Shown here in pieces: positions 1,778 to 48,800 of a DNA stretch of 64,000 nt (position 1 is the stretch's first letter; every line of letters begins with the position of its first letter). The translations under genes and the position numbers were made by a program. Origin of the DNA: Paraphysomonas bandaiensis (Eukaryota > Protista > Chrysophyceae); contig CBFFRP010000406.1 in assembly GCA_965644295.1 (NCBI GenBank), positions 248,001 through 312,000 on the forward strand, given 5' to 3'. A model generated the notes under the pieces. It searched no databases. It saw only the letters and a program-made list of their open reading frames with translations, and had not been told where the DNA came from.

Positions 1778-2838
1778 ATGAACGCTCATGCTCAGCCTGT
1801 GTTTATCTTCAAAATCCTTTTAGTTGGTTCAGTTAACAGCAATAAAACCAGCTTTCTAGTGCGTTATGCTAATGGGCGAACACCTGTCCAAATTCCGACT
1901 ATTGGAATCGACTTTAAGATCAAGAGTATACTAGTAGATCAGCGCATTGTGAAGCTTCATGTATGGGATACTTTACATTGCGATAGATTCCGTCCATCCT
2001 CTAGAACACCGATTCTTTTCAAAGGCGTCAGTGGTATGTTCCGCCAGCATTTCGAATAAATTTTGACAAGAGAGTGTTAACTTTAGGTATTGTACTATGC
2101 TACAACATTGTGGATAGGAAGAGTTTCGATATTTTACAGTCGTGGATTGACAACATTGGCTCCTCCGACCCCGATATATATGGTGTGGTAGTGGGTATTT
2201 ACCCTGAAGGCTTTGCAGAACACGAACGCTGTGTACCATCCTCTGAAGCTCGAGACTTTGCACACTACAATAACTTGCAACACTTTGAAATTGACCCTGT
2301 AGCATCCTCCCAAGAGGAATGTAATGCTCCCATTGATTTATTGGGTCGACTCTGTGTACGCCGCATCTTGAGTGGAGGGTCCTGTGGATTTTCGGAGCCC
2401 AACACTTTTCACAAGGTTTCAATGGGATGGACAACTGGACGACATCTGCACTTTGGGCACGAGTTCAAGCGTTTCGTCATATACGTTCTTGTTGCGCACA
2501 ATAGACCGAGACAGGTTGATGAGGTATTCTCTAAACATAAGTAATCCTGTAGTCGTGATCTTTCAACAGGATGATAAGGCGGGGTCTAGTTTCCCTGACT
2601 ATGTGACTACTTTACCACTTGAGGTGAGTGTATCAGGTATCATTTTCCATCTCTAAGCTGGTGTGTGCAGCTTTGGTTTACGATATTCTCCTATTGTGAC
2701 AAGTCTACCTGGGTTTCCAATAGTGACTACAATAGGTCCTCTTCTGCATACAGAACTAGCACTGCATGGAAGTCCATTACTGGTTTAGGAAGCCGCCACT
2801 CATGCGCCAATGAAGGAAACAATTGTGTTGTATCTTAG
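1778..2838 (+). CDS. Degenerate Rab-like small GTPase with C-terminal F-box/SOCS-like motif and CaaX box (4 exons)
   Basis: Rab features FKILLVG, PTIGIDFKIK, VKLHVWDT, IVLCYNI, SFDILQSW. GT-AG introns at ~2034-2086, 2524-2569 and 2624-2670 splice in frame to ...TTLPLE|LWFTIFSYC...GNNCVVS* (stop 2836-2838). Confidence 0.8.
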
Positions 2839-5652: not shown

Positions 5653-8521
5653 ATGCCAGGCTTATCAAATAGAAACCCCGTGCCGGGCTATGGAAATATC
5701 GGTAAAGTCCACATACGCTATAAGCCGAAACAACCCCCTAAACCCCTATACGGCCTCGTGCTCTATCTCTTCTGTGTATCTCTTGTATTATTCTCGTGGA
5801 GTTGGTCGAATAAATGGAGAAGACAAGTGGGTGTGTTGCCGTGTTTTAGGCAAGTGATTAAGTGGGTGGATGAGGCTCGTATATATACAGAGAGCTCATA
5901 TGGTCATGAGAAACATTCAGATGGAGCCAACATATCTCTTGATTCGGCTGGACACCCTCTTATTCGAGCTACCTCTGTGGAAGATGTGTTGTTTGGTCAG
6001 GGTTATGTGCATGCCAGGGATCGATTGTTTCAGATGGATTTTGATCGTATGCGAGCACTTGGTCGTTTATCGGAGTTCTATGGTGAACAATGGCTTTCCT
6101 CTGACTTCATGGCCAGGGCTCATAACTTTTCTGGTCAGGCAAATGAGGACTGGTTAGCACATGATGAAGTTGGGAAGGCGCATTTGCAGAGCTTTGCTGA
6201 TGGTATAAACGCATACCTCGGTGAGAAGCACAGTCTACCACTAGAATACCTGGCAATGGGTATGAACGAAAGTAGCATAGAGTTTTGGCATCCAACTCAC
6301 TCCTTGGCGATACTTCGATATTTTGCTTCCGCCTCAAGTGAGTCGTGGGAGTTAGAACTTACTCGCACCCTTGTGTCAGAGATGTCTGGAGGTTCGGACT
6401 TGCTGGGTGTTTTAGGTCTGGATGACGAAGACTCAGCGTTAGACGAGGACACTTTCCTCCCCTCGATATCTTCCAGTGCTGCGTGGGTACTCAGTGGGAC
6501 TCATACAGCTTCTGGTCGTCCTATCCTTTCCACCACTCTTAACCTAGAGGTATGACTATTAGTGCTTTTATTCTAGCATATGAAGTAACACGTGTACAGC
6601 CCACTGCTCCTGGCGCTTTGGTGCAGAATACGTTGGTTGTGCAGGGCCATATGCATGTTGTGGGGAGTAGCATTCCCGGTGTGCCCTTTGTATACACAGG
6701 TCGCAATGAGAACATTTCGTGGTCCTTTTTACCCTCTGGTCTTGATACTGAAGATCTCTTCGACGAACGGATAGATTCGGTGAATACAAGTAATGGAATT
6801 CGGTGGCAATATCTCCAGGAGATTGCAGCTGTTGAGACCATGGAATGTGCACCTTCTAATACGGCGGCTGAATGTGATACAAAGGTGAGGGAGGTGTGGG
6901 CAGATGTCGAGGTGAAGGTGGAAATGATGAAGGTCAAGGAGAATCGTGGACGGGGAGTAGTTGAAGAGCTTCCACTGACTCTAATGCGTACTGTTCGCGG
7001 CGTGGTAGTAACACCAATGCTTGCAAGCGTTAGTGGCAGTCACCTTCAGGCCTCAAAGCGACACCTTGCCCTGAGCACTGTGGCTAGTCGCCACCGCATG
7101 GATATGTCTGCTCTATATGCACTCAACACAGCGGCCACTTGGGATGATTTTCTCGAGGGAGTAGAAAGAATTGAGGCAATGTCTCTCAACGCTCTGTACG
7201 CGGATAGTAGTGGTAACATCGGACGCACTGTTACTGGCAGGTATGTCTTATTTTGTTGCTCAATCTGCTCAGTGACCTGTTATGGTATTAGGGTACCAAT
7301 GCGGGCGAAGGGTCACAGCGGTCATTTGGTATCTAACGGAGTGGTAGGGGAGTGGATAGGCGACGAGTCAGCTGTGGATGCAGATCGGTACACTCACCAC
7401 CCTCTGCGCCGGCTTAATCCTCCTAGTGGCGTTTTAGGATCTCTACCATTTCATATGGACCCGAAGAATCCACTTGTTATTGCAATCAATAGTGCCCTTG
7501 AGGGATCCAATGCCACACTGGATAGCATACGCGAGTTGGAGTGTTCAACGTCATCACCCTCTTCTGTTGCGCTATCCAAGCTTATCCGTCGGTCTTTACA
7601 GGAAAATGTATGGCCGAATGGTTTCAGTGATCGTGTGTTGAAGATCTTAGGTGATCAAGATGGAGAGGATGATTACCTGGTCACATCACGAAAACCGTTG
7701 CTACTGGAGGCATTTAGGGTACAGCTTGCAGATCTACTTCTTGATCCTATGCACAGCACTGCATTAGCCGTTCGTGGAGAGGCACATAGTCCGTTTAAAC
7801 GATCAACTATGCTGAGCAGGTGCGATTCAATGAAAGAATATATATATCGTAAATGTAATGGTTATTCAGTAATTTTGACTGGATTGGAACTATGCTCTCT
7901 GTAAACTCGTCACCTGCAGTGGAAAGGTGGATGGAAGTCTTGGGCGGTAGGGGTGCCGTCATTCGTAATGCGCTCATGGATGCAATGGAGTGGGTGGATG
8001 CACGTACATCAAGCTGGGTATCATATTCCTACTGGGGAGATATGCATGGGGCTCGTTTTGCTCATTCTCTATCGGTACATATTAGTATGTGACCTGAATA
8101 TCACTTATATATTAATGCATAGGAGCTAGAGTACATCGGAGAATTTCTATCTCCAGGTCCTGTAACTCTCTCGGGAGGTGCTTGGGATGCCCCACGAAAG
8201 ACTGGAACCGACACTACGACCAATAATCACAACCAAGACGGATTTGGGTGCTCATTGGGGCGCCACGGTGGTAGTCGTCGTTGTCGACTGACAGTTCACA
8301 GATCTTTGTTCGATCTGAGTTCGCCCAAGCTGTCTTATGTCGTGAACCCGCCAGGCCCTTCTGGTAGAATTGGGAGTCCCCATTACAACTCTGTTCTTTC
8401 TCTGTGGGCTAAATGTGAATTGTTGCCCATCATCTGGACTGAGGATGATTCCAGTGAGTCCTTTCATGTGTCACCATTCCATGAAGTGGACAAGAACGTA
8501 GGAGATAATAGTGAACTATAG
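5653..8521 (+). CDS. Penicillin acylase (peptidase S45 / Ntn-hydrolase) family protein with N-terminal TM anchor, multi-exon
   Basis: Motifs GHPLIRA, FGQGYVHARDRLFQMD, GRLSE, FADGINAY, SAAWVLSGTHTASGRPIL, PGVP..TGRN, YADSSGNIG, WGDMH, PGPSG..GSPHY. Short GT-AG introns link the ORFs at 5653, 6552, 7892 and 8255. Confidence 0.85.
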
Positions 8522-9644
8522 TGTATGAAGTGTAAGTTTTGGTGGTATATGTGCGCTGAAGCACAAATTAGGCAAGTTGCCCTAATGGAATACAACTTTT
8601 TTACAATATATAAATAGTCTTTTACAAAGTATACTATTTCTTTCACTGAGGTCTTTTCGAAAGAAAACTTCGCGGTATTTCGAATATTGTTATCATTGTA
8701 TCATCGTGTGAACAAACCACACTGTCGATTTGATGAAACACTGCCCCTCTAATAACAGTTAGAAATAATTAAGCTAAAATCATTTGCGATTATTCGGTGG
8801 CACCTTCTTATAGTATTAATGACTACCTTGTAGTAGCAGACATAAACTATTCGCTTTTACAGTGTACAATGTCGAATATTTTCGTTGTAAGGGCCATGCT
8901 AAGAGTGTCATGATTGATCATATGCTACTGCATAAAAGAGAATCAGTGGTAAGTTCTATGCTGTTATCTTTTAGCTGTCAAGTGTACTGTATTTCTATGC
9001 AACTAACAAGTGTTGACGTATGTTCCTTGCTTTGGATTCCATCAACAATAATCATGTCCACCCATCAACAATCAAACGGAAATGCATTGGAAGCATTCCA
9101 ACCTCTTCGTTATTATCATTTCTTTTCTCGAAGAACACTCGTGCATTATCTTCTGGTACCAGTTTATCGCTCATATCGCCAATTCTTTAAATGAATTATT
9201 ATGTAAGATTATCCTATGGATATTATACTTTTTTACCAATCTTTGATTTTTGAAATAAAAATTGCCGTTTTTAATCAACTTTTCAGTATAAAATGGCGGT
9301 ATTATTATATCAATTAATTGACAATTATTAAAATTGAGACATCAAATCAATTAATTGATACGCAGCCCTGGTATAATGGTATAATGCACTGGCTCTTTGT
9401 TGGAGTAAATTGTTTCAATAAGAAACTTTTATTCAGCGAGTACTGTGCATTACCTATTAACAATATTGTGTCGGCTGAGTACGAGGTAGTGACTAATATA
9501 AAGAAAGATGCCACCAAATATTCGCAAATTATTCAGCTTAATTATTACTAACTATTATAAGAGGGGTGCTGCTTCAACAAATCGACAGAGCAAATTTTAC
9601 AATTAGAAAATAACCATGTAGATGTGCTAGGACAAGTTACTTTC

Positions 9645-11329
9645 TCAATAATAAGTCTCTCCTGGCGACAGATCGTAGTCAACAACCTTCCAGTCGCTGA
9701 GTCCTTCATCCTCATTGTACACTTGCTTGAATGCAAGAGTATAAATTTTGGCAACAACATCACTCTCTCCTCCCTGCATAACAGAACGTCATATTTATCA
9801 AACGAATAGAGTGGTGAAAACAAATAAGGTGTTGTTCCTCATCCACGCATAAATCTGACACATCACACTACACCACGTCGTGGTAGCAGTCACCAGCATC
9901 ACTAATAATCACAGGACAAAAGTACATAAAAGATATATAAACAGTCCTCACCTCTATGATCTCCCCTGCTCTGTTGCGGATGCAGTTAATCTGCTGGACC
10001 ATGTACACCACTAGAACAATAGGTCCTTCATGCTCAAGATATCTGCAGAAAAACATCCCACATTGAATAAGATCATGATGACAACTGATAGAAGCAATGA
10101 ATATCCTTACCGAATGAGAATTTGGGCCTCGTCTATGTCCAGTACATTAGTATCAATAGATATTCCATCACTCTTGCGCTGTATATACAAAGCAGCAATA
10201 TATCAGAAAACACAGCTGGCAACAAGGTTCATTTACCGTCCGGATATCTGCCGCTAGTTTGTTATACACTGCTTCTCCTAGCAAGGGCTTTAGAGTCTTT
10301 AGATCACCCTCCAGGTGAGCCTTAATAATTGCGGGAGCAACGTCACGCTTAATTTCTTCTGCCCACTGCTCCTACTCACAACACAATTATATATAACAAA
10401 ATTTCACAATATATAGCTCCCACACACAATCCACATCAGGAAGAAAAAGTATGCACATGTAACTGTCACGCAGTCTAACCTTGATAAAGTACGGGTCGAG
10501 CTTCTGGATCTCCGCTACGGCCATGCCCTCCTCAGTGGGAGCTGTCATGCTTTCCCAGGCTCCGGATATCTTGTAAACCAGAGGGTTCTGAGTTGTCTCC
10601 CAGAACTCACGTGCATCCTATATACTGAGTCAACAACTTTATACCACTCCACACAACACAACTCACATGAATTTTGTTTGTGACATCTTCGCCTATCTTG
10701 GAGGCCTGTTTCCCTATATCGGTATTGGCCGCCTGGCGACTAAAACGCTTGGTATTTTTCAACATCTCTTTAATTAAGGGGGAGTCTTCCAGTCTTGCAT
10801 ACATTTGTTCCCAAGTACTCTTATTTGTTTTCGATACTACTAATGCAGAGGGTCCATCATATGCTGCTTCCTCTTCTTCTTCTTCATCATCATCAGACGA
10901 CTTTTTTGCTTTGAACGATGAAGCCTGAGCAACCTTCTTGCGTACTTTGCTTTCCTTATCGCCAGAGATCATTTCATTCCATGCTCCTTTCACCTCTGAT
11001 ACAAAATTTGATGATGCATCTCTTCCACTTTGTAAATACTTATAAGCTAATGCTATATAATCAACAGAAGTGTCGGTCTTCTTCGCACTATCATGAGATT
11101 CACTGCTCTGTGATGCCTCCGCCTGCTGCTCCTTATCCGCCTCAGCCTTCTCTTCCACTTTCTCTCCACTCTCACTGTAATTTCCTTTCATTTTATTGAG
11201 AACATCAGCAAAACTGCCGCCATTCGGTTCATTTTTCACACTCAGTGCTCTGGCTATTCTGTAACTCCCAGCATGTGGTCTGAACACTCTTATCGCTCCA
11301 TATCTTGCCCACATTACCCTTGATATCAT
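9645..11329 (-). CDS. TIM44: Mitochondrial import inner membrane translocase subunit TIM44 (multi-exon)
   Basis: Arg-rich presequence-like N-terminus, EFWETTQNPLVYK segment, and C-terminal Tim44 domain PIVLVVYMVQQINCIRNRAGEIIE|GGESDVVAKIYTLAF..WKVVDY, ending at stop 9645. Confidence 0.9.
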
Positions 11330-13859: not shown

Positions 13860-16855
13860 ACCGACAACAGCATCGGAGGGGCAGCACCCACATCGGAGGG
13901 GCAACATCCGTAGTCCCGTTTTTCTGTTCTGTACGTGAATATTAGTATGATCGAATGGGGATGGCGGGCTCTTCATATCTACACACCACATCCAAATAAG
14001 CATATCTTCATATTTAAACTATTCGGAACATACTCTTGTGTTGTTGTGCCCACTGTAGAAACTTAATTTCATCGATTTTATGCTGTAATGATGCAGGAAG
14101 TTCACCCAAATATTGACCACAGTTTGGACCACACAATCCCATTATCATGAAGTGCTCGTTACAATCATACATCCCTAGTGGATGAAGACTGTCCCCTGGA
14201 TGATTTGTCATTAGATATATTTTGAAGGAGCTTCAGAAAGAGCTACCAGCGGATGATGCATACGACTAAAAGTGTTTACATGAAGCTCTTCTGCAGCAGT
14301 GCAGGGCAACTATGAAAGGAAGGATATATGCAAAGATATCCAAAGAGAATGGGGAAATGGAGGGAGAAACAAAACTAGGAGACAAGATTTGAAGATAGGT
14401 GGCATTGAATATATATCATTATGCTTTATCATGAAGACTTTAAAGCGAACTAGAATTTAAGGACATACATACTTCCCTTGCAGTAAGTTGTAAGACGAAG
14501 TTGTTTGTGAGTATGGATTTCATGATATATACAACTAATGTGGTGTACGTTGTAGATCGCCGTAATGATATTGCATTTCGGTCAATAGTACATACTTAAA
14601 TCATCGTATGCCTTATTTGCATAAACCATTTGATGTAACCTAAAACTGTAATGATGTATGTTATACTTTCCGTGTAGTAAGCTATTTATGCATGTATATT
14701 GCATGATGTAACAAGTGTAATGTATACTGTAGGCCGCTGCAATGATATTCGAATTTGTTTTTGTTAATTGCACATACTCAAACCTTCGTATGTCACAACT
14801 ATTTGTCTAACGTTATCTCGCAGCAGCAATTTCTAGCGAGCGTGTGCAAGCAAGCTAGGGACTATTTATTATAGTTTACAGACAATCGTTTCAATATACT
14901 CATGCTAAGGTATAGCAAGTAGCTATGTAACGCTTGTAAAATGTTTATATGTGCGCGAATAATAAGACGAAAAACGGTTATACTGCTTGCTGCCTGGCCT
15001 CGTAAGCAATCTGTTTCGTGCAAGTACATGGAATTTTTCTCATACTATTCCTGGGCAATTTATTTCATACATCGTGTAGATGTTTCAAAAGTTGTTTCAA
15101 TTCAGATACTTTTAAAAAAGGTTAGTACGTTTCTACTTAACACACTTTTTAAACAAAACATGGTTCAGCTAGAATACTTCTCATTTGTTCATACAAAACA
15201 TGTTAAAACTAAAATATTTTTCAAACAAGACATGTTACAACTAAAACACTTTTCAAACAAGACATGTTACAGCTGAAACACTTTTCAAACAAAACATGTT
15301 TCAACTAATATACTTCATAAACGTTTAACTCAGATACTCTTCAACGATGATATGTTTCAAGGAAAACAAGAGCTTCAGCTAATTCTCCAGCGACTGCTTC
15401 AAACTTCTGTCTTATTGCTTCAGCTTCTACTCTTTTCTTGGTCACTTTCTCAGCCTTATACTGCTCTGGAGATAAGGAATTAAACCTGTCCTTCTCTGAT
15501 TACCTTCCCAACAGAGCCTAAGCCGCCTTCGCATGTTTCGCCAAAGCTGCGGCATTATTTCTTTCTTCTCACCCCTCCTCCTTGCAAAATTTCTCCACTA
15601 TATCAGGGGCTTAACAAGCCTTTTCCTACTTGTACCTAGACACAGTTTGGCAGGTAGTAATAATTTTAGACTTTAAAATTTAGACAAATGACGTACAGGA
15701 GTGAGGTTGTCCCGTTTTATAATAGTGTTAGATGCAACGGCTCTTCGTCTTATTATTCGCGCACATATAAACATTTTACAAGCGTTACATAGCTACTTGC
15801 TATACCTTAGCATGAGTATATTGAAACGATTGTCTGTAAACTATAATAAATAGTCCCTAGCTTGCTTGCACACGCTCGCTAGAAATTGCTGCTGCGAGAT
15901 AACGTTAGACAAATAGTTGTGACATACGAAGGTTTGAGTATGTGCAATTAACAAAAACAAATTCGAATATCATTGCAGCGGCCTACAGTATACATTACAC
16001 TTGTTACATCATGCAATATACATGCATAAATAGCTTACTACACGGAAAGTATAACATACATCATTACAGTTTTAGGTTACATCAAATGGTTTATGCAAAT
16101 AAGGCATACGATGATTTAAGTATGTACTATTGACCGAAATGCAATATCATTACGGCGATCTACAACGTACACCACATTAGTTGTATATATCATGAAATCC
16201 ATACTCACAAACAACTTCGTCTTACAACTTACTGCAAGGGAAGTATGTATGTCCTTAAATTCTAGTTCGCTTTAAAGTCTTCATGATAAAGCATAATGAT
16301 ATATATTCAATGCCACCTATCTTCAAATCTTGTCTCCTAGTTTTGTTTCTCCCTCCATTTCCCCATTCTCTTTGGATATCTTTGCATATATCCTTCCTTT
16401 CATAGTTGCCCTGCACTGCTGCAGAAGAGCTTCATGTAAACACTTTTAGTCGTATGCATCATCCGCTGGTAGCTCTTTCTGAAGCTCCTTCAAAATATAT
16501 CTAATGACAAATCATCCAGGGGACAGTCTTCATCCACTAGGGATGTATGATTGTAACGAGCACTTCATGATAATGGGATTGTGTGGTCCAAACTGTGGTC
16601 AATATTTGGGTGAACTTCCTGCATCATTACAGCATAAAATCGATGAAATTAAGTTTCTACAGTGGGCACAACAACACAACAGTGTATTCCGAATAGTTTA
16701 AATATGAAGATATGCTTATTTGGATGTGGTGTGTAGATATGAAGAGCCCGCCATCCCCATTCGATCATACTAATATTCACGTACAGAACAGAAAAACGGG
16801 ACTACGGATGTTGCCCCTCCGATGTGGGTGCTGCCCCTCCGATGCTGTTGTCGGT
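13860..16855. repeat. Long inverted repeat (foldback): 1112-bp arms at 13860-14971 and 15744-16855 around a 772-bp spacer
   Basis: The arms are reverse complements with no indels (coordinate sums are both 30715). Only 3 clustered mismatches were noticed. ORF pairs 14582-/15942+ and 14014-/16504+ are mirror images. Confidence 0.95.
15140..15360 (+). repeat. Degenerate ~32-bp minisatellite in the foldback spacer
   Basis: Units of the type AAAACACTTTTCAAACAAGACATGTTACAACT at 15211, 15243 and 15275, with decayed units on either side. Confidence 0.8.
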
Positions 16856-25681: not shown

Positions 25682-28600
25682 TTAACCTCTTCGGGGTCGT
25701 TTCTTCTGCTGCTCCTCCACACTGTTAGACACACTCCTCTTAACCCCGGTAATCGTTTTCTCATGACGGCTGAAGATCTTCGTGGACAACGCCTTTGTAA
25801 AAATATCGGCCGCCATATCATCCGTAGATACATGAATCAACTTTGCTGTAGGAAATTTTCCATTAACATGTTCTCTTATCCAGTGATACTTGATGTCAAT
25901 ATGCTTCGACCTCTTATGGTACACTGGATTCTCTGAAAGATCCTTTGCACTCTTACTATCCATAAAGAATGGAGTCGGCTTCGCTACCAAGAGTCCGAGC
26001 TCCTTGAACACCCCCGAAGCCACACCAGTTCTTGCAAAGCCGCATACTCCGCCATATACTCAGATTCCATGCTCGAAGTCGCAACTGTGGTCTGAAGCTT
26101 GGACTGCCAGGCCAAAGCGCCCGCACATAAAAGCACGATGTATCCCGTTGTGGACCGCCTAGTCATCCTATCACCAGCCCAGTCTGAATCACTGAATACA
26201 TGTAAATCAAACTCACTCCCACTGAATCTGATTCCCTTATCAACTGTACCACGTAAATATTTCAACAAATGAATAGCTAATCTGCAAGTCGCATATGTTG
26301 GAGAAGTACTAAATCGAGCCAATAACCCCACAGCGTAAGCCAGATCAGGTCTAGTGTGAATCGCCAAATGCAACACCGCTCCAATAATTCCTCTATACGG
26401 AAATGATTCGACCCACTGCTTCTGCTCCTCCGTCAGCTCACGTTGCTCTGCCAACAAATCCTGAACATTGGTAGGTAGTGGAGTCTCCTTATTCTTACTG
26501 CTCTTTCCCATAAACGAACTGAATTTCTTTACAATATTCTTGGCATATTCCGATTGATCTAACATGTACCAGTCCTCGCCTCTCGTGATTCTGATATTCA
26601 GAAACCGTTTGCACACACCCAGATCGTGCATTTCAAACGTTTCGCAGAACCTACGTTTAACACTTTCTAAGTAGGTGAGATCAGCAGATACAATGATAAT
26701 ATCATCAACATATATCAGCAATAAGTGCAATTGACCATTACTCCATCGCATATACAAGCATGTATCTAAAATGCAAGCAGTAAAATGTAACGATTTGATG
26801 AACTTGTCAATATGCTTGTTCCACTGCCTCGGTGATGACCGCAAACCATATAAGGCCTTGATCAATTGAAAACACCACCCCGCTGGCAACTCTTCATCAG
26901 GTGGAGGTGCCATATAAACATCCTCTTCAAGATCGGCATAACAAAACGCTGATGATACGTCCAACTGATGTACATGCATATGAAACATAAAGGCAATTGC
27001 AAGCACCAGTCGAATGGTTATTCCTTTGACCACTGGAGCAAACGTGGACTGCTCCTCCTCCGTTTTTTCTTGTAGATTCCCTAATGCAACCAGCCGCGCC
27101 TTATACTTGACTACATTCCCCAGAAGGTCTCTCTTCACCGTGTGAACATACTTTGCTCGCACCAACTTCACTCCTCGTGGAGTTCGCACAATCTTTAAGA
27201 CACGTCTCTTCAGTAGTGAGGTCTTCTCCACCTTCCGAGCTTCTCTCCACTTCATGTACTGTGGAGATCTCTCTGCTTCAGCATAGGAGTCTGGTATCTT
27301 AAAGTCATCATGTTGAAACTCTGCATGTTTAAAGTTAACAGTGCATGCATCTGGCACCTCAACCATATTTATTTCTCCTAACACCGATGCGTTCGCCAAC
27401 CTACGCTGTAGCCGTTTCCGCCGTACACGACCATCACCATCTAGTTCAATAGGTCGTCTAGTAGATATATACGAACCCATACCTTGCTCATCCTGAGCCC
27501 GCAAATCTTGCGGTGTGGGAGGAGCCCCGCTCGCATCCCCAGACCCATGGTCTGTCGAGGTCTGCAACCTCACGACTGTCTGTTGACAGGTTGGGTCAGG
27601 ACTCTCCTGGAACCCTCCAGGTCTTCCCTGGTCCAGCTCCCTGGCTGGCGTAGTACTCAGGGCGTCCCCCTTTCCTATGTACCCGGTATTCCCGGGGGTT
27701 TCTGCAGTCATACGCACCACGTCTTCGACGTGTATAGGCACCCGGTGCTCTATATGCTCGCGACCTGCAGTAACAAGTGAACGGTATGCTACAATCACAC
27801 CCTTACGTTCTACAACTCTTGTTGTCTTATACAGAAGTCCGTCCTCATCATCAATATGATACGTTCCTTCTAAGCTGACATAGTCGGATGCAAGCTTGGG
27901 TCTAGCGGCCTCCCGCACTCGAAGAGCATCAATCTCTGCGAAATACTTCTCTGATCGTGATGGCGTTGACTCATCAGTCAATATATGGACTGTAGTCACC
28001 ACCTTGTTTGATTCAGGAAGATATACATGGTATCCTACCTTCTCATCAGAGTAACCCATTAAATATCCAACTAGAGCCTTATCCTCCCAATCCTTTCGTC
28101 GATCCGCCTTCGGTGAAAGAACATAAGTTCGACACCCCCATACCCTAAGATATCTCAAATTTGGAGGCTCGCCCGTTAGAAACTCTATAGGAGACATATA
28201 CCCTTTATCTGTTTTCGTTGGCAATCGAATCAAAATATATCTGGCTGCCATGTATGCATCCAGCCAAAATTGCGGTGGCAGTCCAGATTGGATTAGCATT
28301 GCAAGAGTCATCTCTCCAGCAGTTCTGAACTTCCTCTCCTCTATGGCATTCATTTCTGGAGAGTCTGTTGAGCTCCACGTATGTTGATAGCACTCCTGTG
28401 TCCTAAGATACTGACGCAGCTCCTCACTGATTAATTCTCCTGCACCATCGGCATGATAGTGCTCCATCTTGAGCTTGTACCTTCTAACATCTCCTCTAAA
28501 TAGCTCTTTGAAGACTTCTAAGACCGCTTCCCCAGTTCTGTGGACTAAACCCGTCGCCCAGAACATTTTGCTGGCATGATGCGTTATCTTTAACACATAC

Positions 28601-30438
28601 CTCTCACCTCCTCTAGCAGGACAATTTAAGTACACAGCGATATCTGCTGAAAAATTCGGTCTAACGGAATTCTCGTCCTTCGTTCGGAAGCTGACTCGGG
28701 TTATCTTAGACCTGGCACACACATCACACAAACACTGATTTTTGTGTACCTTGGCTGTGAGGTGTTTCCGTTTCAACCCTGTACCCATGATGAGCATCCT
28801 CTTATGTGCCTCCACTAACGCATGTTTGTTGAAGTGACCCGCTCTCCGATGCAGCAACTCCAGCTCGTCCTCACCAGTCCTATCGCTAAGATTTACTTCA
28901 CAATTACTCGGCGTAGACACATCTGGAAGCTCCAACAGCTGCTGAGTTGGAACTGCAGTCATTCCATTCTTCATGGGTCCCTCCAGTACCAGTTCACCAG
29001 TATTACAGTCATAAATTTGGATCCCATACCACACCGTGAATCGATAGCCCATTTCGTTCAGCTTACGTCCGGAGCACAGGCATCGATTGATCTGATCTGA
29101 AATTTCTATGTCTCTCCATGCTCCACGGGAACCCACACTTGTGATATGAATCTCTGATCCCTTCTTAGAGCCGTTTATCACCTTTGAAGTATTCATATGA
29201 GTGTCAAGCATGGTCACATCATTCATCAAGAACATTGATGATGAACAGCAGGTGTCAATATATGTATAATGCATGTCATCATTTACACTACATATATTCG
29301 TTTCATGTATATTGCATGACAATTTCATAACATCCTCGATCATATTTGCTTCATCTTCATCAGAGAAATCTGCTGGTTCTCCACGCCGTATATTCTCTAC
29401 TGTCAGCAGCCTTTTGTCCGGCTTCCTACCATGATTCTTCCCTTTCTCTCCTCTTCTAGAATGCTTTTTCTTCGTCGTTGGACAATCAGCAGCAAGATGT
29501 TCCAGAGACTTGCAATTTCTGCATCCCGTGTATTCAGCACTTCCAGGACGCTGCCCTGATATCTCTCCATCCTTCTTCCTCTGCTTCCTCCTGCACTGTT
29601 CAGTTGAATGGCTATGAGGAATTCCTTCTTTCCTGCAATATCTACAGTTGCCCTTCTTACGCTTATCCCGTTCCGTTCGAGACCGTTTGCTCTTTTCAAT
29701 GAAGTTCAGCTCCTCCACCTTCTTGCGTTTCCGCTCTAACGCAATCCTTCCAGGAATGGTATCATCATACCGTTCTATCTTCCTTGATAATGTTGCATAA
29801 TCAACATCATCAGGCATCAAATACAAAGCAACATTCAGAGGAGCATATTCTTCATTCAACAGACCTTCTCGTAACCGTGTTATTTTTGAGAGCTCCGATA
29901 TGTCCTGCTGCTGCTCCTGTAGCTCTTTCAGCAGTATTTCAAACCGTATTATATAGTCCTTCGCAGTCTCCTCCGGACGCATACGGAAAGAGCCATACTG
30001 AGTCAACAGCTCACTGATCTTGTTTTGCTTCCCTCCAGCAAAGCACTTCTTCAACTCATCAATCATAATATGCGCCTTAAACCTGTTGCTTCCTGTTCCA
30101 TCAGCCTTGAACCCTTTATGTAGAAGATGGAATTTCTGAAGCGCCTTCGAAGATGATTGCACTGCCTCTCTGCAGTACGAATACGCTATGGCATTCGCCT
30201 TCCAGTACTTCTTCACAGCCTGTCTGTAAGACTTCTCCTCCATTAACGTGAGTGGCTGTTCCCCGAAGTCGCTCTCCTTCGGTGGTGGCTCCACAGCTAC
30301 TTCACTTTGCTCTTTCCTCATGAGGAACGTTTCGAAGTCTTCAATCCATTGTTCAACATTGCTCTCATTAAACTGTGGCACTACTCCTCTATCCTCCTTC
30401 TCTCCTCCTCGCTCGCTACCATGTTGAGAAACGCTCAT
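25682..30438 (-). CDS. Copia gag-pol polyprotein with one frameshift at the 26011-26015 homopolymer in RNase H
   Basis: Zn knuckle CRNCKSLEHLAADC, protease-position YIDTCCS, HRRAGH..CDVC, integrase D-D-E (SADI, HADGAGE, AIEER), RT YKARLVA / YGLRSSPR / YVDD, RNase H FSDSDWAG...KHIDIKYH...ADIFTKAL. Confidence 0.95.
30407..30421 (-). promoter_or_regulatory. Primer-binding site of the copia element (TGGTAGCGAGCGAGG), probably complementary to initiator tRNA-Met
   Basis: Directly follows the 5' LTR and begins with TGG. It complements a tRNA ending ...GCUACCA, as eukaryotic initiator tRNAs do (inference). Confidence 0.75.
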
Positions 30439-42839: not shown

Positions 42840-45800
42840 ATGGCAAAGGAATTAGTGCTCAATATACTCGCTAATGTACTAGGTGATTACATTGAGGGGT
42901 TTTCCAAAGAGAATTTGAAAATTGGGATTTTGTCTGGAAAAATTGTTTTGAAGAATCTGAAGATTAATGAGTCTGGTATTCGTAAACTGAATCTTCCATT
43001 CAATGTCACACAAGGGATTGTCAAGCAACTAGATGTTTGTATTCCGTGGAAAGCATTAGATAGTCAGCCAGTTAAGATATTTATTGACGGTGTGTATGTG
43101 TTACTTGAGCCTCAAGATTGTAGTGGATCTGATCCTGGGTTTGCACATCGGAGAGTTTTGTTTTTAAACCAGTACAGACTCTTCAGGGTTGAAAAAACAG
43201 TTGAATTAAAAGCACAGTTATCAAATCCAGATGATTTTCGGCGTGTATCTTATATGCGAAATCTTACTGCGAAGATAATCGACAATCTGGAGATAAGTGT
43301 TACGAATATTCACGTCCGTTGTGAGGACGCTATAACTTTTCCACTTCAGACGATATCATTTGGTATAACCTTTGCATCCTTTTCTATAATCACAACAAAC
43401 AGTGAGTGGCAGGATTCCTATATCTCTGATAGTGATGGACTACCCAAGTACAAATTGGCTAGTCTTCGGGACTTTTCAGTGTATTGGGATACAGACAGTG
43501 CTACGTCAACGATGCTGAAGTTCGACGACTGGGTTCGATTTATGCAAGGAGCTATATATAAGGCGTCTGGTAACGACTCGAATAAGTGGCGCAGGCATTG
43601 TATAGTACTTCCTCCGAATGAGCTGCAGATTAAGCTTACCCACGATAGCCCTCACCTGGGCGTGAGGATAGAGAGCCCTGATCTCCAGTGCTGCTTTACT
43701 GAGCACCAGTACAAGCAAGCGATCATGGCATCTAGGGCTGTGTCAGTGTTCAATCATAAGCAATATTACGCTCGTCATCGGCCAGTAGGATTGCCATCTG
43801 TAAGTGGGAAGACTGCAAGAGCCTGGTGGAAATATGCACTATTACTCATCACAGAAAGAGAGGATATTCTCGTTGATAAGGTATTCTATCCACCTCTTTG
43901 GAGTTAATTTATATAACGCATTTTGCAGATGACTCTAGCTATGGCGTGTTGTCGATATCGGAGACGATATGTGGACCTAATAGTTCGCCGTCAGAGTCAC
44001 GGAGATGGACTGGATGCAAGCTCTCCTCTCTGTGAGAAAGAAGAACAAGAGGTCGAAACGATGGAGAGCTCGTTACCGCTGTTTACACTGGTCGTCTTTC
44101 GGGAACTGGCCACTCGGGAATATGTGCTTTACCGACGAAGAATGATACGGCGTGAGCGTGAAGGATGGGGAGACAAGATGAAAGACATAGGGCGGGGGGT
44201 AAGATCCAGAGCTGCATCCATACAATCACGTTGGGTATCCCGGTTGATGCACGGGCATAGTGTCCAGGACAAATACAGGACTCGATCTGATAGTGCGGGG
44301 AGCAGTCCCGAGGGAGTTGTTGAGGGGATGGCAGAGGTATGCACAGCATGTCTATATAGGGTCGCTCAATAGTATACTCTGCAGTTACAGGAAGATCTGA
44401 GCAAAGCTCTGGGGTTAGAGGAGGAAAACTTGTCTCTGTCTTTCACACTGGATGTGACTGTAGGAACCAGTTTAGTGCTGACTGTGCGGGATGATGACAT
44501 GACGGACTTGGCTTCTCTTTCAGCATCTGCTGCGTTGGGTCTGAATCTTCGTCCAGGTCATCTCTCCGCATCGGTGTCACTTAATCGCCTGGAGGTCCGC
44601 GATGAGCGCGCTCCATCTCCCCTCTTTTCACACCTCGTTAAAAGCGCTGGTGGTATGTCAATTGGTCGTGGTGATACAGAGTCCCCGCTGTTTAGGGCAT
44701 TGTATGAGAAGGATGGTTGCCACTCGAAAGTAATGGTTTCAGCACTTCCGCTAGAGATCTACTACAATCACATATGCATCGAAAAACTGCTACGAGTATT
44801 TGTTCTTCCTCCCTGCATCCCATCCAATCAGTATAAGATACGTCGAAAGTATCGTAATAGGCATGTGTCAGTAGACTCATCTTTTTCTCTCCACAGGACC
44901 CTGAATCAAACCTTGCCATTTCCAGTGGCCGATGATGCAGCGGAGGTGAGTCCTTCCCACTTGGAGGACTCATGGCCAAAATTCGAGGCCATGCGCCGTG
45001 ATAATGGGGTTGGCACACAATTCGCCACCCTCTCGGTCTCTCTGGAAGTGAGTGCTCCGAAGATTGTGATCCCTGTACACGTGAGTCGGGACTGTGGCTA
45101 CATACTAGTCGATGCGGGGTATCTATCAATGAGTGCTATGTTCAACGTATGGGAAACCACTTGTAGCATGGCTCTGTCTGATGTTAGTGTTGATATGTAT
45201 TCCACCTTTGAAAATATAGACGAAATGAATTGCGGTCGTATTGGATCCAGTTTGATTCTTCCATTTGTGGTTAATGTATGTGGTCGTAATACTGGCCAGA
45301 AAGTGACTTGTGCTGCTGTCGACATCGTTGTTTCTCCGAGCATATGCATTCAACTCAACGCTGTGCAGTTATCAAAGCTAATACACATAGTGGATGCAAT
45401 TTTGACGACTCTAAAGAATGCTGGAATATATCGTGAAATCCAATCTCCTTTTCCGTTATCCTCCATCCAAATCGAAGATGATGTTAGAGTTATTCAAGCT
45501 AAGAGTGTTGACCTAATATCTTTCGAGGTTAATCTTACGGTCGCTGTGGACAAATTCAGTTTGTCTCTGCAGCACGGTATTCTTTCGAAGTGTGCTCATC
45601 AGTGTACAACTTTACATGCCCATGACATGAAACTTGTTGCGTCGAAACGCCTGCATGATATTTGTGTTGAGTTAGAATTAGGATCATTCAACGTTGAGGA
45701 TTCCGCACGGCCATCCAATCAACTGCAAGTTATATCTAGCCCTGTGACAGACAACGACAGAATTATTCAGATATCTTTTGTTGCTATTCGCGACACAATG

Positions 45801-48800
45801 TCTGCACGATACCGTGACTATGGAGTTGAGATTGAAATGAAGTTTGGAAAACTCTTTTTATATTCAGACTCGTCTGCCATCAAGCACCTTTCTCCTTTCG
45901 TTGAGGCTGTATGTAGTGCGAGGACAGGCAATGACTTGGTTACCCCGATGGCACCAGTGCAATATCATATGCAATGTGCTGCAGAAGAGTTGTATGTTCC
46001 TGCAGGTGTATGCATATCAGTAAGCTTAGAAGAAGTCTCTTTACATCTGATGAGGCCTGCTAACAGTGTGCATCATCACGATTCGGGTGAATTCGCAGAA
46101 TTGGAAAGCGTGATTGTGCTTGATATGCAATATTTTCATGGCGATATAAAGTTTAGCGATGAGGTTCGTGCAAGTATGGGAATTAAGTCAATATCAATTC
46201 TCGATGCTCGAAATATTAGTCAAGATTATCATTATAGGTACCTATTGCGCCCGAATACTGAGCTTACAGGTAATAGTGACTCTAGTTCGGACCAGTTTAA
46301 CTGCTTTGCTGTTATCACGAAAAACGTAGAAGGGTTTGAATGCTCATTGGATGTATCTGTGAATAATATTTCTTGTTACGTTTCCTTGGATGTCGTCATG
46401 GATATTATAGATGTGTCCTTGACACTTATTGGCGAAGTGAATCGGTTGATGTCATGTATTGTTTTCTCGCGCTCATCTCTGGCGTCTGTAGATGTCGATG
46501 TCCCCACAATAGTTCATGGACATATTCAAATACCGAATCCAACGTGTGTCTTTCTTGAGGACCCAACATCTGCAACTTCTCGAGCAGTAGTTTTCAGCAG
46601 CTCTATAAGCATTAAACTAGGTCACGATTGCGTTAATCAAATACAATCCTTCGATGCTGAATGGACAGCAACACTATACGTGTCAATGTACCATTGTGAA
46701 ATGTTCGTCGTATTGAATATGATTGAGTGGCGCCCTTCGAAGCTCTTGCAGCCAATGTCACTTCAACTCCACGTGACTAGAGTTTCTGAACGTAACATCG
46801 TAACATCGTGCAATGTGTCATTAAGTGTAGATGAAATCAATGCCCGAATAATGATGAGTGATGTTCTACTAATGCACTCTATCCTGATGAGAAGAACTCT
46901 ATTTGATTCTGTTCTACCGTTAGCTGAAGTTGTTTCAGATGTTGACTTATATGATATTGTCAATGGTCCTAGCATGCACGACTTTATGAAAGTGGCTATG
47001 GCTGTATCGAACGGCCCGTGTGCTAATAACACAGTTGTAGCTTCTAAACCTGTGTCTGTAGTTATATACAAGGTATATGTCATTCTTGCCAAGAGCACAA
47101 TATTTCTACTCAATGATTTGGATGGTGGTGTCATACCACTGGTTCGCTTAGTTTTAGACCAAGCACATTTTAAGGCAGATGGATTTACTCAAGACATTAG
47201 AGGTTTGGGTTCTGCATCAGTCAATGCCGATGTATATAACAGTCTGGTATGTGAGTGGGAGCCACTTGTTGAAGAGTTCTATCCAGAGCTGACATTATCC
47301 AGTGATTCGTCATCATGCTCTGTGAGCATTCAGTACGCTAATACTCTTCAACTTAATCTTACGAGCTCCGCTCTGGAATTGATGTGTCAAACGTATAGTG
47401 TCTTAAAGAGCGAATTAACATCTTCACATCCAGTCTCCAGAGATAACTCTGGCCCTCCAGTAACCATTCACAACGAAACTGGTTTGTGTATAGATATATG
47501 TTCCTCCGATGGCTGTTTAGTTCAATTGTCCGCGAATGATGCTGCTTCCCTGCACGTTGGAGGGAGTGTAAGTGCTATCATACCTCAAAGATTGGAGTCT
47601 GATAGTGTCAAAACTGTTGTGGTTCCAATTCTTACGGATGCAGTGACTCTTCGAGTGAAAGATAAGGACAATAACTCATATCGGGCGATTACTGGTGCAT
47701 CATTTGATAAAAATGGCTCTAGTTACTACCCCCTTGTGTTACCTGATGAGGTTTTGGAATCGTCGGCACCAATAATATTGGAGTGGAATGTAACTCGTCT
47801 ACCTTATGACGACTGTAAAGTTGTAACGATTAGTTCAACTCTAGCAGTGAAAAATGAGCTTTCTTACGCCGTGCTATTGTGTACTGATTCTGGCGAGGAG
47901 TTGGGACCTTGTAATGAGTACGGTATGATATATGTGCCAATTTCAGTTGCTCAAACTGCATGGCTTAAAGTGAAGCCCGCGTATATACCGTGTAGCTGGA
48001 GTGGGGAATTTATGTGTGCTGAGAAATGTGATGGCACGGTAGTTGATGTGGATGGTATGTGCACGGATGAGATGAATGCTTGCTCTCTGTATATAAGGGG
48101 GCGAGTTATTCGACGTGCGAAAACTACCCTGGTGACACTGTATACCCCTGCTGAAATAAAAAATTCCTTGCCCTGCTCCATCCAGTACAGAATAGAAAGC
48201 AATGTGGGGGATAATAGAGGAATGACATATTTAGTGGAGCGTGGATCTCTCGAACCTGGATCAACTGGGCAATTAAACTACCTGAATACATCCCAAGAAA
48301 TTCAAGTGTCTTTGAAATTGTCATCGCATTGCTGGGCAAGCAGTAAAAGTTTTAAAGCATCAAAAAGACAGCATCTAACCAATATACCTTTTTTGAACGA
48401 ATCCGGACAAATTGTGCTCATATTGTCCATTATCTATACTTTTCATGATTCGAGACCATGTAGTTTGTATATTTTTAGCACACACATGTTGGTGGATCGT
48501 TCTGGCCTAAATGTTAGTATATCAACTCGCGTAGAGAAAGACAGCACCGCTAGACTGGTTCGACACACGTATAATCATTTGGGTGATATATCGCAGTATT
48601 CTTTTACGCGGTCAACTCAGGTTCTGGAAGACATTGATGACAGTTGCAGTAGTGAATCAAGCACTGATGATGGAAGTGTTGTCATTGGGGAATTTTCTGT
48701 ACGAAGTCGGCGGCGATATGAAGTAATTCAAGGGGGTATCGGGACGAAAGTGCATACGGATAGAGGATTGACGTTCACATATGTCCCTGTGTTATTTCGT

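What the first reader, a model, noticed from the sequence alone, without database searches (positions are those of the whole stretch)
1778..2838. Hidden spliced gene: pseudo-GTPase Rab fused to an F-box/SOCS-like motif and a CaaX box, a candidate membrane-tethered ubiquitin-ligase adaptor
Seen: four exons, which the ORF track splits, splice into one protein. The Rab fold is clear, but the nucleotide-binding motifs G1, G3, G4 and G5 are all altered: G1 GSVNSNKTS (not GxxxxGKS/T), G3 DTLHCDRF (not DTAGQERF), G4 GIYPE (not NKxD), G5 EIDP (not SAK). The effector loop PTIGIDFK is intact. After the G domain comes W..GRHLHFGHEFKRFVIYVLVAHNR...TTLPLELWFTIFSYC, then a CVVS* prenylation motif. Known: LP.E+W..IFSY is the core of F-box/cullin-box helices, and animal Rab40 has a Rab-SOCS box-CaaX layout that recruits a cullin ligase. 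Inference: an independently evolved, nucleotide-independent Rab mimic that brings a cullin-RING ligase to membranes or Rab effectors in a protist.
Basis: partly seen in the sequence, partly recalled or inferred. Interest (0 to 1): 0.8.

Follow-up and report, generated by a model that had tools for sequence, protein, structure and literature searches.

The report
Lipid-anchored dead Rab with F-box-like tail
A real, conserved four-exon gene of a silica-forming alga (probably a diatom) encodes a Rab-shaped protein that has lost its GTP-binding motifs, kept a lipid-anchor signal and gained a two-helix tail whose second helix looks like the start of an F-box; whether that tail recruits a ubiquitin ligase is plausible but not shown.

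Summary
Exons 1778-2033, 2087-2523, 2570-2623 and 2671-2838 (+ strand), separated by three 46-53 nt GT-AG introns, encode 304 codons. Exons 1 and 2 match the Ras/Rab profile colinearly, and the best solved relatives are all Rabs. The GTP-binding motifs G3, G4 and G5 are lost, and G1 has lost its second glycine.

The gene is not decaying. About eleven unnamed relatives exist in environmental and SRA assemblies. Three genomic contigs carry all four exons, with introns 1 and 3 at the same codon and phase. Synonymous sites are saturated (pS 0.73-0.98) while pN is 0.17-0.54. The terminal CaaS box is kept in four lineages (CVVS, CTTS, CVTS, CIAS).

The C-terminal part is a bipartite module: a helix W..H..F..FR..V..LL, a variable linker, then a helix LP.E+W..IFSYC...W. 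Two unrelated gene families of the same genome share it (hhalign 89.5%).

Only the LP-helix resembles an F-box, and only its first helix, at sub-threshold scores. No SOCS-box signal was found, and the structure models are uninformative. The ligase-adaptor reading is therefore a reasonable hypothesis (about 0.4), not a finding.

No RNA evidence could be obtained. The joined protein was never searched or folded.

The parts
1778..2033 (+). Exon 1 (85 codons plus 1 base): Rab N-terminal half with the P-loop, switch I and switch II regions
   Evidence: Pfam Ras profile 1-62, E 1e-10. Rab3A E 5.6e-15 and all top PDB hits are Rabs. Homologous exons in L014, L016 and L019.
1826..1849 (+). Degenerate G1/P-loop GSVNSNKT (second Gly replaced by Asn; Lys-Thr kept)
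   Evidence: Alignment to Rab3A GNSSVGKT. Relatives have GSSDSCKN / GSSDSLKD.
1964..1990 (+). Degenerate G3/switch II WDTLHCDRF (canonical WDTAGQERF)
   Evidence: alignment. Relatives have WNPCISHATF and similar.
2034..2086 (+). Intron 1 (53 nt, GT..AG, phase 1 in a Gly codon)
   Evidence: Read from the sequence. Same position and phase in L014, L016 and L019.
2087..2523 (+). Exon 2: Rab C-terminal half, linker and motif 1 of the tail module
   Evidence: Pfam Ras profile 75-142; Rab11 alignment; 11 relatives found.
2194..2208 (+). Lost G4: GIYPE in place of NKxD
   Evidence: Alignment to Rab11 LVGN--KSD. The family consensus YGVVVGI.P shows the loss is family-wide.
2287..2298 (+). Lost G5: EIDP in place of ETSAK
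   Evidence: family consensus NNLQHFEIDLATSSQ.
2428..2505 (+). Tail module motif 1: W-x4-H-x2-F-x3-F(K/R)-x2-V-x3-L helix
   Evidence: His and Val are invariant in 23 sequences from three families. Predicted as a helix in the module model.
2524..2569 (+). Intron 2 (46 nt, GT..AG, phase 0)
   Evidence: This position is not conserved: absent in L014, and elsewhere in L016/L019.
2570..2623 (+). Exon 3 (18 codons), ending in LPLE, the start of motif 2
   Evidence: LP.E is conserved in relatives.
2624..2670 (+). Intron 3 (47 nt, GT..AG, phase 0), directly after LP.E
   Evidence: Same position in L014, L016, L019, L017 and L018. Gene callers read through it as LP.EV.... The sequence is uninterrupted in L013.
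2671..2712 (+). Motif 2 helix LWFTIFSYCDKSTW (resembles F-box helix 1)
   Evidence: Conserved in six loci. hhalign against own F-boxes. Weak Pfam and PDB F-box hits.
2767..2790 (+). Conserved WKS.TG(L/M)G motif in the tail
   Evidence: Present in the window, L014, L016 and L019.
2824..2838 (+). CaaX box CVVS plus stop (X = Ser, the farnesyl-type box)
   Evidence: CVVS / CTTS / CVTS / CIAS, each directly before TAG, in four lineages.

Best explanation
The locus is a single-copy, conserved gene for a Rab-derived pseudo-GTPase that is probably farnesylated at a C-terminal CaaS box. Between the G domain and the lipid anchor it carries a bipartite two-helix docking module.

Most likely mechanism: the dead G domain no longer cycles and serves as a constitutive binding surface. 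The farnesyl tail holds the protein on a membrane. The module docks it to a partner. That module is helix 1 (W..H..F..FR..V..LL), a variable loop, then helix 2, which starts with an F-box-type LP.E turn. The leading specific candidate partner is Skp1 or Elongin C with a cullin. On that reading the protein is a membrane-tethered substrate receptor, an analogue of animal Rab40 that arose independently.

Shown here: gene structure, Rab ancestry, family-wide loss of the G motifs, conservation under constraint, the conserved CaaX, and sharing of the module between three gene families.

Inferred: loss of nucleotide binding, farnesylation, membrane location, and above all the ligase partner.
For: - Gene model and Rab identity. 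Foldseek of the P0003 model hits Rab43, Rab2A, Sec4 and Rab3C.
- Family: 11 relatives. P0012 finds only this gene in the own genome.
- Conserved intron positions.
- Constraint: pS 0.73-0.98 against pN 0.17-0.54; dN/dS about 0.07-0.16 where dS is finite.
- CaaS conserved in four lineages.
- Module shared with a beta-domain family (weak atlas lead to PHR; L024, 39 relatives) and with the L022 gene: own-genome HMM hits; hhalign 89.5%, E 2e-6, both motifs in register.
- F-box helix-1 likeness, always in the same register. hhalign scores 27.5 and 18.9 against a shuffle mean of 7, sd 1.5, max 13.
- Partners exist in the genome: two Skp1 genes, one Elongin C gene and at least four cullin loci.
- Precedents: Rab40-SOCS-Cul5 (PMC10509765) and trypanosome FYVE-F-box-GTPase TbFRP (PMC3593210).
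Against: - No F-box or SOCS model reaches its curated threshold.
- The own-genome scan with F-box-like (75 hits) hits none of the module genes.
- F-box helices 2-3 are missing.
- Single-sequence hhalign probabilities are 6-8%.
- The column-shuffle null does not preserve helical periodicity, so it overstates significance.
- AlphaFold gives pLDDT below 50 for the tail of P0003 and 67 for the isolated module. Foldseek found nothing, and the best VIA Z of 4.3 is to generic helical hairpins.
- The module is rare (four genes found here), unlike typical expanded adaptor boxes.
- The distant clade (L017, L018) ends right after helix 2, with no CaaX in that exon.
- There are no transcript data.
Confidence: 0.4

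Rival explanations
1. Same conserved farnesylated pseudo-Rab, but the bipartite module is unrelated to cullin ligases. It would be a lineage-specific helical hairpin for dimerisation or for docking to some other partner, and the LP.E likeness to F-boxes would be convergence of a Pro-capped amphipathic helix.
For: - Only about 20 columns align to F-boxes, and nothing reaches a threshold.
- The model is a plain two-helix hairpin without an F-box or SOCS fold match.
- The module is rare in the genome.
- The linker varies from about 10 to 150 residues.
Against: - The register of LP plus the hydrophobic pattern is the same in four independent weak matches.
- Scores exceed all shuffles.
- In L022 the module sits N-terminal to another domain, as F-boxes do.
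- The second host family gave a weak atlas lead (score 0.75) to PHR, a domain that (from memory) occurs in E3-associated proteins, and one member has a below-threshold ubiquitin-family match (E 0.018).
Confidence: 0.33
2. The aromatic, hydrophobic helix 2 (LWF.IFSYC...W, or LWLEVLSFC..LWW in the distant clade) is a membrane-inserting amphipathic helix. It would act with the farnesyl group as a two-signal membrane anchor, and the protein would be a membrane-bound pseudo-Rab with no adaptor box.
For: - Helix 2 is rich in Trp, Phe, Tyr and Ile and lies next to the lipid anchor.
- The distant clade lacks CaaX in the exon found and ends in WW.
Against: - The same helix, always paired with motif 1, occurs in proteins without a CaaX, and in L022 near the N-terminus.
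- The invariant His and Val of motif 1 and the LP turn point to a folded unit.
Confidence: 0.12
3. The protein still binds a nucleotide in a non-canonical way, because this copy keeps the P-loop Lys-Thr, the switch I Thr and the G3 Asp. It would then be an atypical switch, not a pseudo-GTPase.
For: The window copy keeps K23, T24, T41 and D64.
Against: - The guanine-specificity motifs NKxD and SAK are absent family-wide.
- The G3 Gly and the catalytic Gln are lost.
- Relatives also lack the P-loop Ser/Thr, the switch I Thr and the G3 Asp, so these residues are not under family-wide constraint.
Confidence: 0.1
4. A decaying Rab pseudogene, or a chance chain of ORFs that is not a functional spliced gene.
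For: No transcript evidence could be obtained. There is no annotated orthologue, and the word search was blank (which is length-limited).
Against: - Intact homologous exons with conserved intron positions and phases in at least four lineages.
- pN far below saturated pS.
- A conserved terminal CaaS followed directly by a stop.
Confidence: 0.03

Closest known systems
Animal Rab40 (Rab with C-terminal SOCS box, substrate receptor of Cullin5; PMC10509765, PMC8129794)
   Same: A Rab-type G domain is followed by a short helical box with an LP turn and then a C-terminal lipid-anchor region. The proposed logic is also the same: a Rab-shaped receptor for a cullin ligase.
   Different: - Rab40 is bilaterian, Rab18-derived and an active GTPase.
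- Its box is a Pfam SOCS box with two halves 2-10 residues apart.
- Here the G motifs are lost and there is no SOCS signal.
- The spacing is 34 residues in this copy (about 18 to about 40 residues, measured the same way, across the proteins that carry the module).
- The lineage is a silicifying stramenopile, so any similarity is convergent.
TbFRP of Euglenozoa (FYVE - F-box - Ras-like GTPase; PMC3593210)
   Same: A small GTPase domain is fused to an F-box-type element in a protist, with membrane targeting by a separate signal.
   Different: [quoted passage not shown] Here the order is G domain, then module, then CaaX; there is no FYVE domain; the G domain is degenerate.
F-box domains (Pfam PF00646, PF12937, PF13013), including truncated C-terminal F-boxes such as poxvirus PRANC (the latter from memory, not tested)
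   Same: An LP.E turn is followed by an amphipathic helix with the I/L-x-x-(F/Y/L) pattern, in register with F-box helix 1.
   Different: Helices 2 and 3 and the conserved VcKrW segment are absent. An extra upstream helix (motif 1) is obligatory. All scores are below curated thresholds.
Pseudo-GTPases (G domains that have lost nucleotide binding)
   Same: The Rab fold is retained while G1, G3, G4 and G5 are degenerate, and this state is conserved across a family.
   Different: This is an unnamed family, so far seen only in environmental or SRA assemblies and in this genome. It combines the dead G domain with a CaaX box and a shared helical module.

Membership tests
Rab family of small GTPases | Ras/Rab G-domain fold and sequence profile | tested here: met
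   Pfam Ras on exons 1 and 2. All top PDB sequence hits are Rabs. The model of relative P0003 hits Rab43, Rab2A, Sec4 and Rab3C by Foldseek.
Rab family of small GTPases | Functional nucleotide-binding motifs G1 GxxxxGK[ST], G3 DxxGQ, G4 NKxD, G5 SAK | tested here: not met
   GSVNSNKT, DTLHC, GIYPE and EIDP in the window. The loss is family-wide.
Rab family of small GTPases | C-terminal CC/CXC double geranylgeranylation motif | tested here: not met
   The protein ends in CVVS, a CaaX box with X = Ser.
Pseudo-GTPase | Retained G fold with loss of the residues needed for nucleotide binding, conserved in orthologues | tested here: met
   Actual lack of binding cannot be tested with these tools.
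F-box | LPxE loop plus helix 1 hydrophobic pattern | tested here: met
   Weak but consistent, always in the same register.
F-box | Complete three-helix domain of about 45 residues scoring above the Pfam gathering threshold | tested here: not met
   Best scores are 16.0 bits against a cut-off of 21.6 and 12.6 against 20.5. The own-genome F-box-like scan misses all module genes. Only 20-22 columns align.
F-box | Binding to Skp1 | not testable with these tools
   Two Skp1 genes exist in the genome. No complex prediction is available.
SOCS box / BC-box plus Cul-box | BC box [STP]LxxxCxxx[LIV] followed after 2-10 residues by the LPxP Cul5 box; Pfam PF07525 | tested here: not met
   No SOCS_box hit at E up to 1-10. 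Motif 1 reads F[KR]xxVxxxL, motif 2 reads LP.E and not LPxP, and the spacing is 34 residues. An Elongin C gene is present.
Rab40 | Rab18-derived bilaterian clade with a SOCS box | tested here: not met
   The genome has several silicon-transporter loci, so it is not an animal. No SOCS box was found. The origin of Rab40 is taken from PMC10509765.
CaaX prenylation substrates | Cys at the fourth position from the C-terminus, two mostly aliphatic residues, and X directly before the stop | tested here: met
   CVVS, CTTS, CVTS and CIAS, each followed by TAG, in the window, L014, L016 and L019. The lipid modification itself is not testable here.

The most novel reading that the evidence does not exclude
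Diatoms and their relatives independently invented a Rab-ubiquitin-ligase fusion. On this reading a nucleotide-dead, farnesylated Rab serves as a membrane-bound substrate receptor. It uses a previously undescribed minimal cullin-adaptor box: a helper helix plus half an F-box. The same box is also attached to a beta-domain family (weak atlas lead to PHR; UBL seen only below threshold) and to a third gene family.
Probability: 0.3. Interest if true: 0.75.

Novelty: new variant of a known kind. Interest (0 to 1): 0.5.

Why it matters
Rab40 is described as the only small GTPase directly implicated in ubiquitylation, and it is confined to bilaterian animals (PMC10509765). If confirmed, this would be a second, independent case in an ecologically dominant algal group, built on a dead G domain. 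That would show that the Rab shape can be reused as a passive receptor.

It would also define a new short adaptor box that current domain libraries do not recognise.

Even without the ligase link, the result adds an unannotated, conserved family of lipid-anchored pseudo-Rabs. It also gives a recurrent two-helix module to be annotated in diatom and haptophyte proteomes.

Tried and rejected
- **Word search with exon 2.** Blank. This is uninformative, because full-length relatives exceed the length limit. The profile word search only re-found known members.
- **Own-genome paralogues of the tail by single sequence.** None. Only profiles found the module elsewhere. The C158 hit looks spurious.
- **Atlas search with the P0003 tail.** Scores of 0.82, uninformative.
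- **PDB profile search with the module.** Nothing, or only cyclin F at E 0.53.
- **AlphaFold of P0003.** The tail is below pLDDT 50.
- **AlphaFold of the module alone.** pLDDT 67. Foldseek gave no hit and VIA gave at best Z 4.3 to generic hairpins.
- **SOCS reading.** Rejected as a membership claim, because the consensus and spacing are not met.
- **Decaying-pseudogene reading.** Rejected on conservation.
- **Rab subfamily assignment.** Not possible. Exon 1 is nearest Rab3/Rab1/Rab8, exon 2 nearest Rab11, and the nearest own paralogue is a canonical Rab with GDTGVGKS and GNKTD intact.
- **Literature.** Searches found no description of this family or module.
- **Joined protein.** All searches used single exons by reference, or database proteins.

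Full report
**Observation**

The + strand between 1778 and 2838 reads as four exons: 1778-2033, 2087-2523, 2570-2623 and 2671-2838. They are separated by GT..AG introns of 53, 46 and 47 nt.
- The mechanical ORF list shows the same stretch as four separate ORFs in alternating frames.
- Unspliced exon 1 runs into TAA at 2057.
- The four in-frame pieces add up to 304 codons.
- Every search used one exon by reference, or a protein returned by a database.

**Rab identity**

- Pfam Ras matches exon 1 over profile positions 1-62 (E 1e-10) and exon 2 over positions 75-142 (E 3e-6), which is colinear across intron 1.
- Against solved structures, the 60 best sequence matches of exon 1 are all Rabs (Rab3A 5.6e-15, then Rab1, Ypt1, Sec4, Rab8). 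Exon 2 aligns to Rab11.
- These alignments show what is altered:
  - G1 is GSVNSNKT against GNSSVGKT, so only the second glycine is lost.
  - G3 is DTLHCD against DTAGLE.
  - NKxD is replaced by GIYPE.
  - ETSA is replaced by EIDP.
- The nearest paralogue in the own genome by exon 2 is a canonical Rab with intact motifs.

**The gene is conserved**

The word search was blank because of its length limit. The exhaustive search with exon 2 found 19 proteins. Eleven of them share the degenerate G4/G5 region, the helix P(F/I)D.L..LC and the tail motif. All are unnamed proteins from Logan, ENA or JGI assemblies.

I ran tblastn exon by exon on their contigs. L014 (a 63-kb metagenome scaffold), L016 and L019 carry homologues of all four exons in order.
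- Intron 1 lies in the same split Gly codon in all four lineages.
- Intron 3 lies directly after LP.E in every genomic copy.
- This explains why prokaryote-style gene calls end in LP.EV....
- In L013 the sequence LPKEIWFIIFSYC is uninterrupted, reproducing the exon 3/4 join.

Synonymous sites are saturated (pS 0.73-0.98) while pN is 0.17-0.54. P0012, from the most distant clade, finds only this gene in the own genome, so the family looks single-copy. A decaying pseudogene is excluded for practical purposes.

**Degenerate G domain**

Relatives have GSSDSCKN or GSSDSLKD, WNPxIS, YGVVVGI.P and FEIDLATSSQ. The loss of G3, G4 and G5 is therefore old and family-wide. The residues that still look canonical in the window copy (P-loop Lys-Thr, switch I Thr, G3 Asp) are not conserved. 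An AlphaFold model of P0003 has a moderately confident G core, and Foldseek matches it to Rab43, Rab2A, Sec4 and Rab3C.

**Tail**

Four lineages end in CVVS, CTTS, CVTS or CIAS directly before the stop. All four also share WKS.TG(L/M)G upstream of it. By general knowledge of prenyltransferase specificity, X = Ser is the farnesyltransferase type of CaaX box. The two distant-clade contigs end shortly after helix 2, with no CaaX in that exon.

**The module**

Motif 1 (W-x4-H-x2-F-x3-F[RK]-x2-V-x3-L) and motif 2 (LP.E, then an aromatic helix) belong together.
- A profile of motif 1 finds the same pattern in other genes of this genome. These are L022 (two copies on contig C520, with the module near the N-terminus) and L024.
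- L024 belongs to a family of 39 proteins with a beta domain followed by KGW..EH..FP.PL[RK].AV.T.LL, a linker of about 10 to 150 residues, and LP..V.Y.ILEFM. The nearest atlas clusters are from diatoms and haptophytes, with a weak lead (score 0.75) to the PHR domain.
- Profile-profile comparison of the Rab-like module with that family gives 89.5% probability, E 2e-6, with both motifs in register.
- His and Val of motif 1 are invariant in 23 sequences from the three families.

**Is it an F-box or a SOCS box?**

Every weak signal points to the same thing: motif 2 aligns with the LP loop and helix 1 of F-boxes.

| Test | Result |
|---|---|
| Pfam F-box-like_2, P0003 | E 0.012, 16.0 bits (cut-off 21.6) |
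| Pfam F-box, positions 1-17, P0023 | E 0.14 |
| PDB profile search, cyclin F | E 0.53 |
| hhalign, L024-family module vs 14 own F-boxes | 66.6%, 22 columns |
| hhalign, Rab-like module vs 14 own F-boxes | 13.4% |
| Same hhalign scores vs 200 column shuffles | 27.5 and 18.9 vs mean 7, max 13 |

The shuffle null destroys helical periodicity, so it overstates significance.

Against the F-box reading:
- Helices 2 and 3 are missing.
- No curated threshold is reached.
- The own-genome F-box-like scan (75 hits) misses all module genes.
- Single sequences give 6-8%.

For a SOCS box there is no profile hit. The BC-box and LPxP patterns are not met, and the spacing is far larger than the 2-10 residues of SOCS boxes.

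The isolated module folds as two long helices at pLDDT 67. It has no Foldseek hit and only generic hairpin matches, best Z 4.3. That result is inconclusive, not negative.

The needed machinery exists in the genome: two Skp1 genes, one Elongin C gene and at least four cullin loci.

**Organism**

The genome (62.6 Mb, 669 contigs) has several silicon-transporter loci. Earlier notes of this scan call it a diatom. I take it as a silicifying stramenopile, probably a diatom.

**Verdict**

- It is plausible but unproven about ligase recruitment. I give that about 0.4, with Skp1 the leading partner. A ligase-unrelated docking or dimerisation hairpin gets about 0.33.
- The SOCS part is not supported.
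- The family and the bipartite module appear undescribed.
- I rate it a new variant of a known kind, of moderate interest.

Noticed in passing
L024 (G000:C292:20474-21049 and downstream): A gene with a beta domain (weak atlas lead to PHR, score 0.75) followed by the same bipartite module, then an intron right after EFM and an HWDWF exon. It has 39 unnamed relatives. One of them has a below-threshold ubiquitin-family match (E 0.018) at its N-terminus. The nearest atlas clusters are from diatoms and haptophytes.
   Followed up: partly
L022 / L023 (G000:C520 about 9071-9742 and about 14703-15374): Two copies, about 5.6 kb apart, with identical module hits. This 223-codon ORF carries the module near its N-terminus, followed by an unassigned domain of about 130 residues. 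No Pfam hit.
   Followed up: partly
P0015 (database protein, 351 aa): A relative with intact G1 (GDHNTGKS), G4 (GNKVD) and G5-like ISAR but a degenerate G3. It shares the LQHFEIS...SSPFDY..ELC helix with the pseudo-Rab family and may be a still-active sister lineage. Its C-terminal half is unassigned.
   Followed up: no
L013:1-1386 (- strand) next to P0003: In this relative the P-loop exon was not found. An opposite-strand ORF with weak C2 and SET hits abuts the gene, and introns 1 and 3 are absent. This is either an N-terminally truncated orthologue or an unusual contig.
   Followed up: partly
G000:C138:108890-138957: Eight hits to positions 6-37 of the F-box-like profile, all just below the cut-off, lie within about 30 kb in ORFs of 149-566 codons. 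This looks like a tandem array of F-box-type genes.
   Followed up: no
G000:C127:98412-98642 (L047): An Elongin C gene with a short intron after MLSG. It was recognised by Skp1_POZ and by PDB Elongin C matches at E 2e-7.
   Followed up: partly
window 5653-7904 (+): A penicillin-amidase homologue split into two overlapping ORFs (5653-6555 and 6552-7904). This could be an intron, a frameshift or a sequencing error.
   Followed up: no
window 25984-30438 (-): A 1484-codon Copia-type retrotransposon polyprotein (RVT_2 and a retroviral SH3-like domain).
   Followed up: no
window 44430-51113 (+) and 58916-61480 (-): A VPS13-like gene (VAB and middle regions) and an eIF3a gene. Both are ordinary eukaryotic housekeeping genes.
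   Followed up: no
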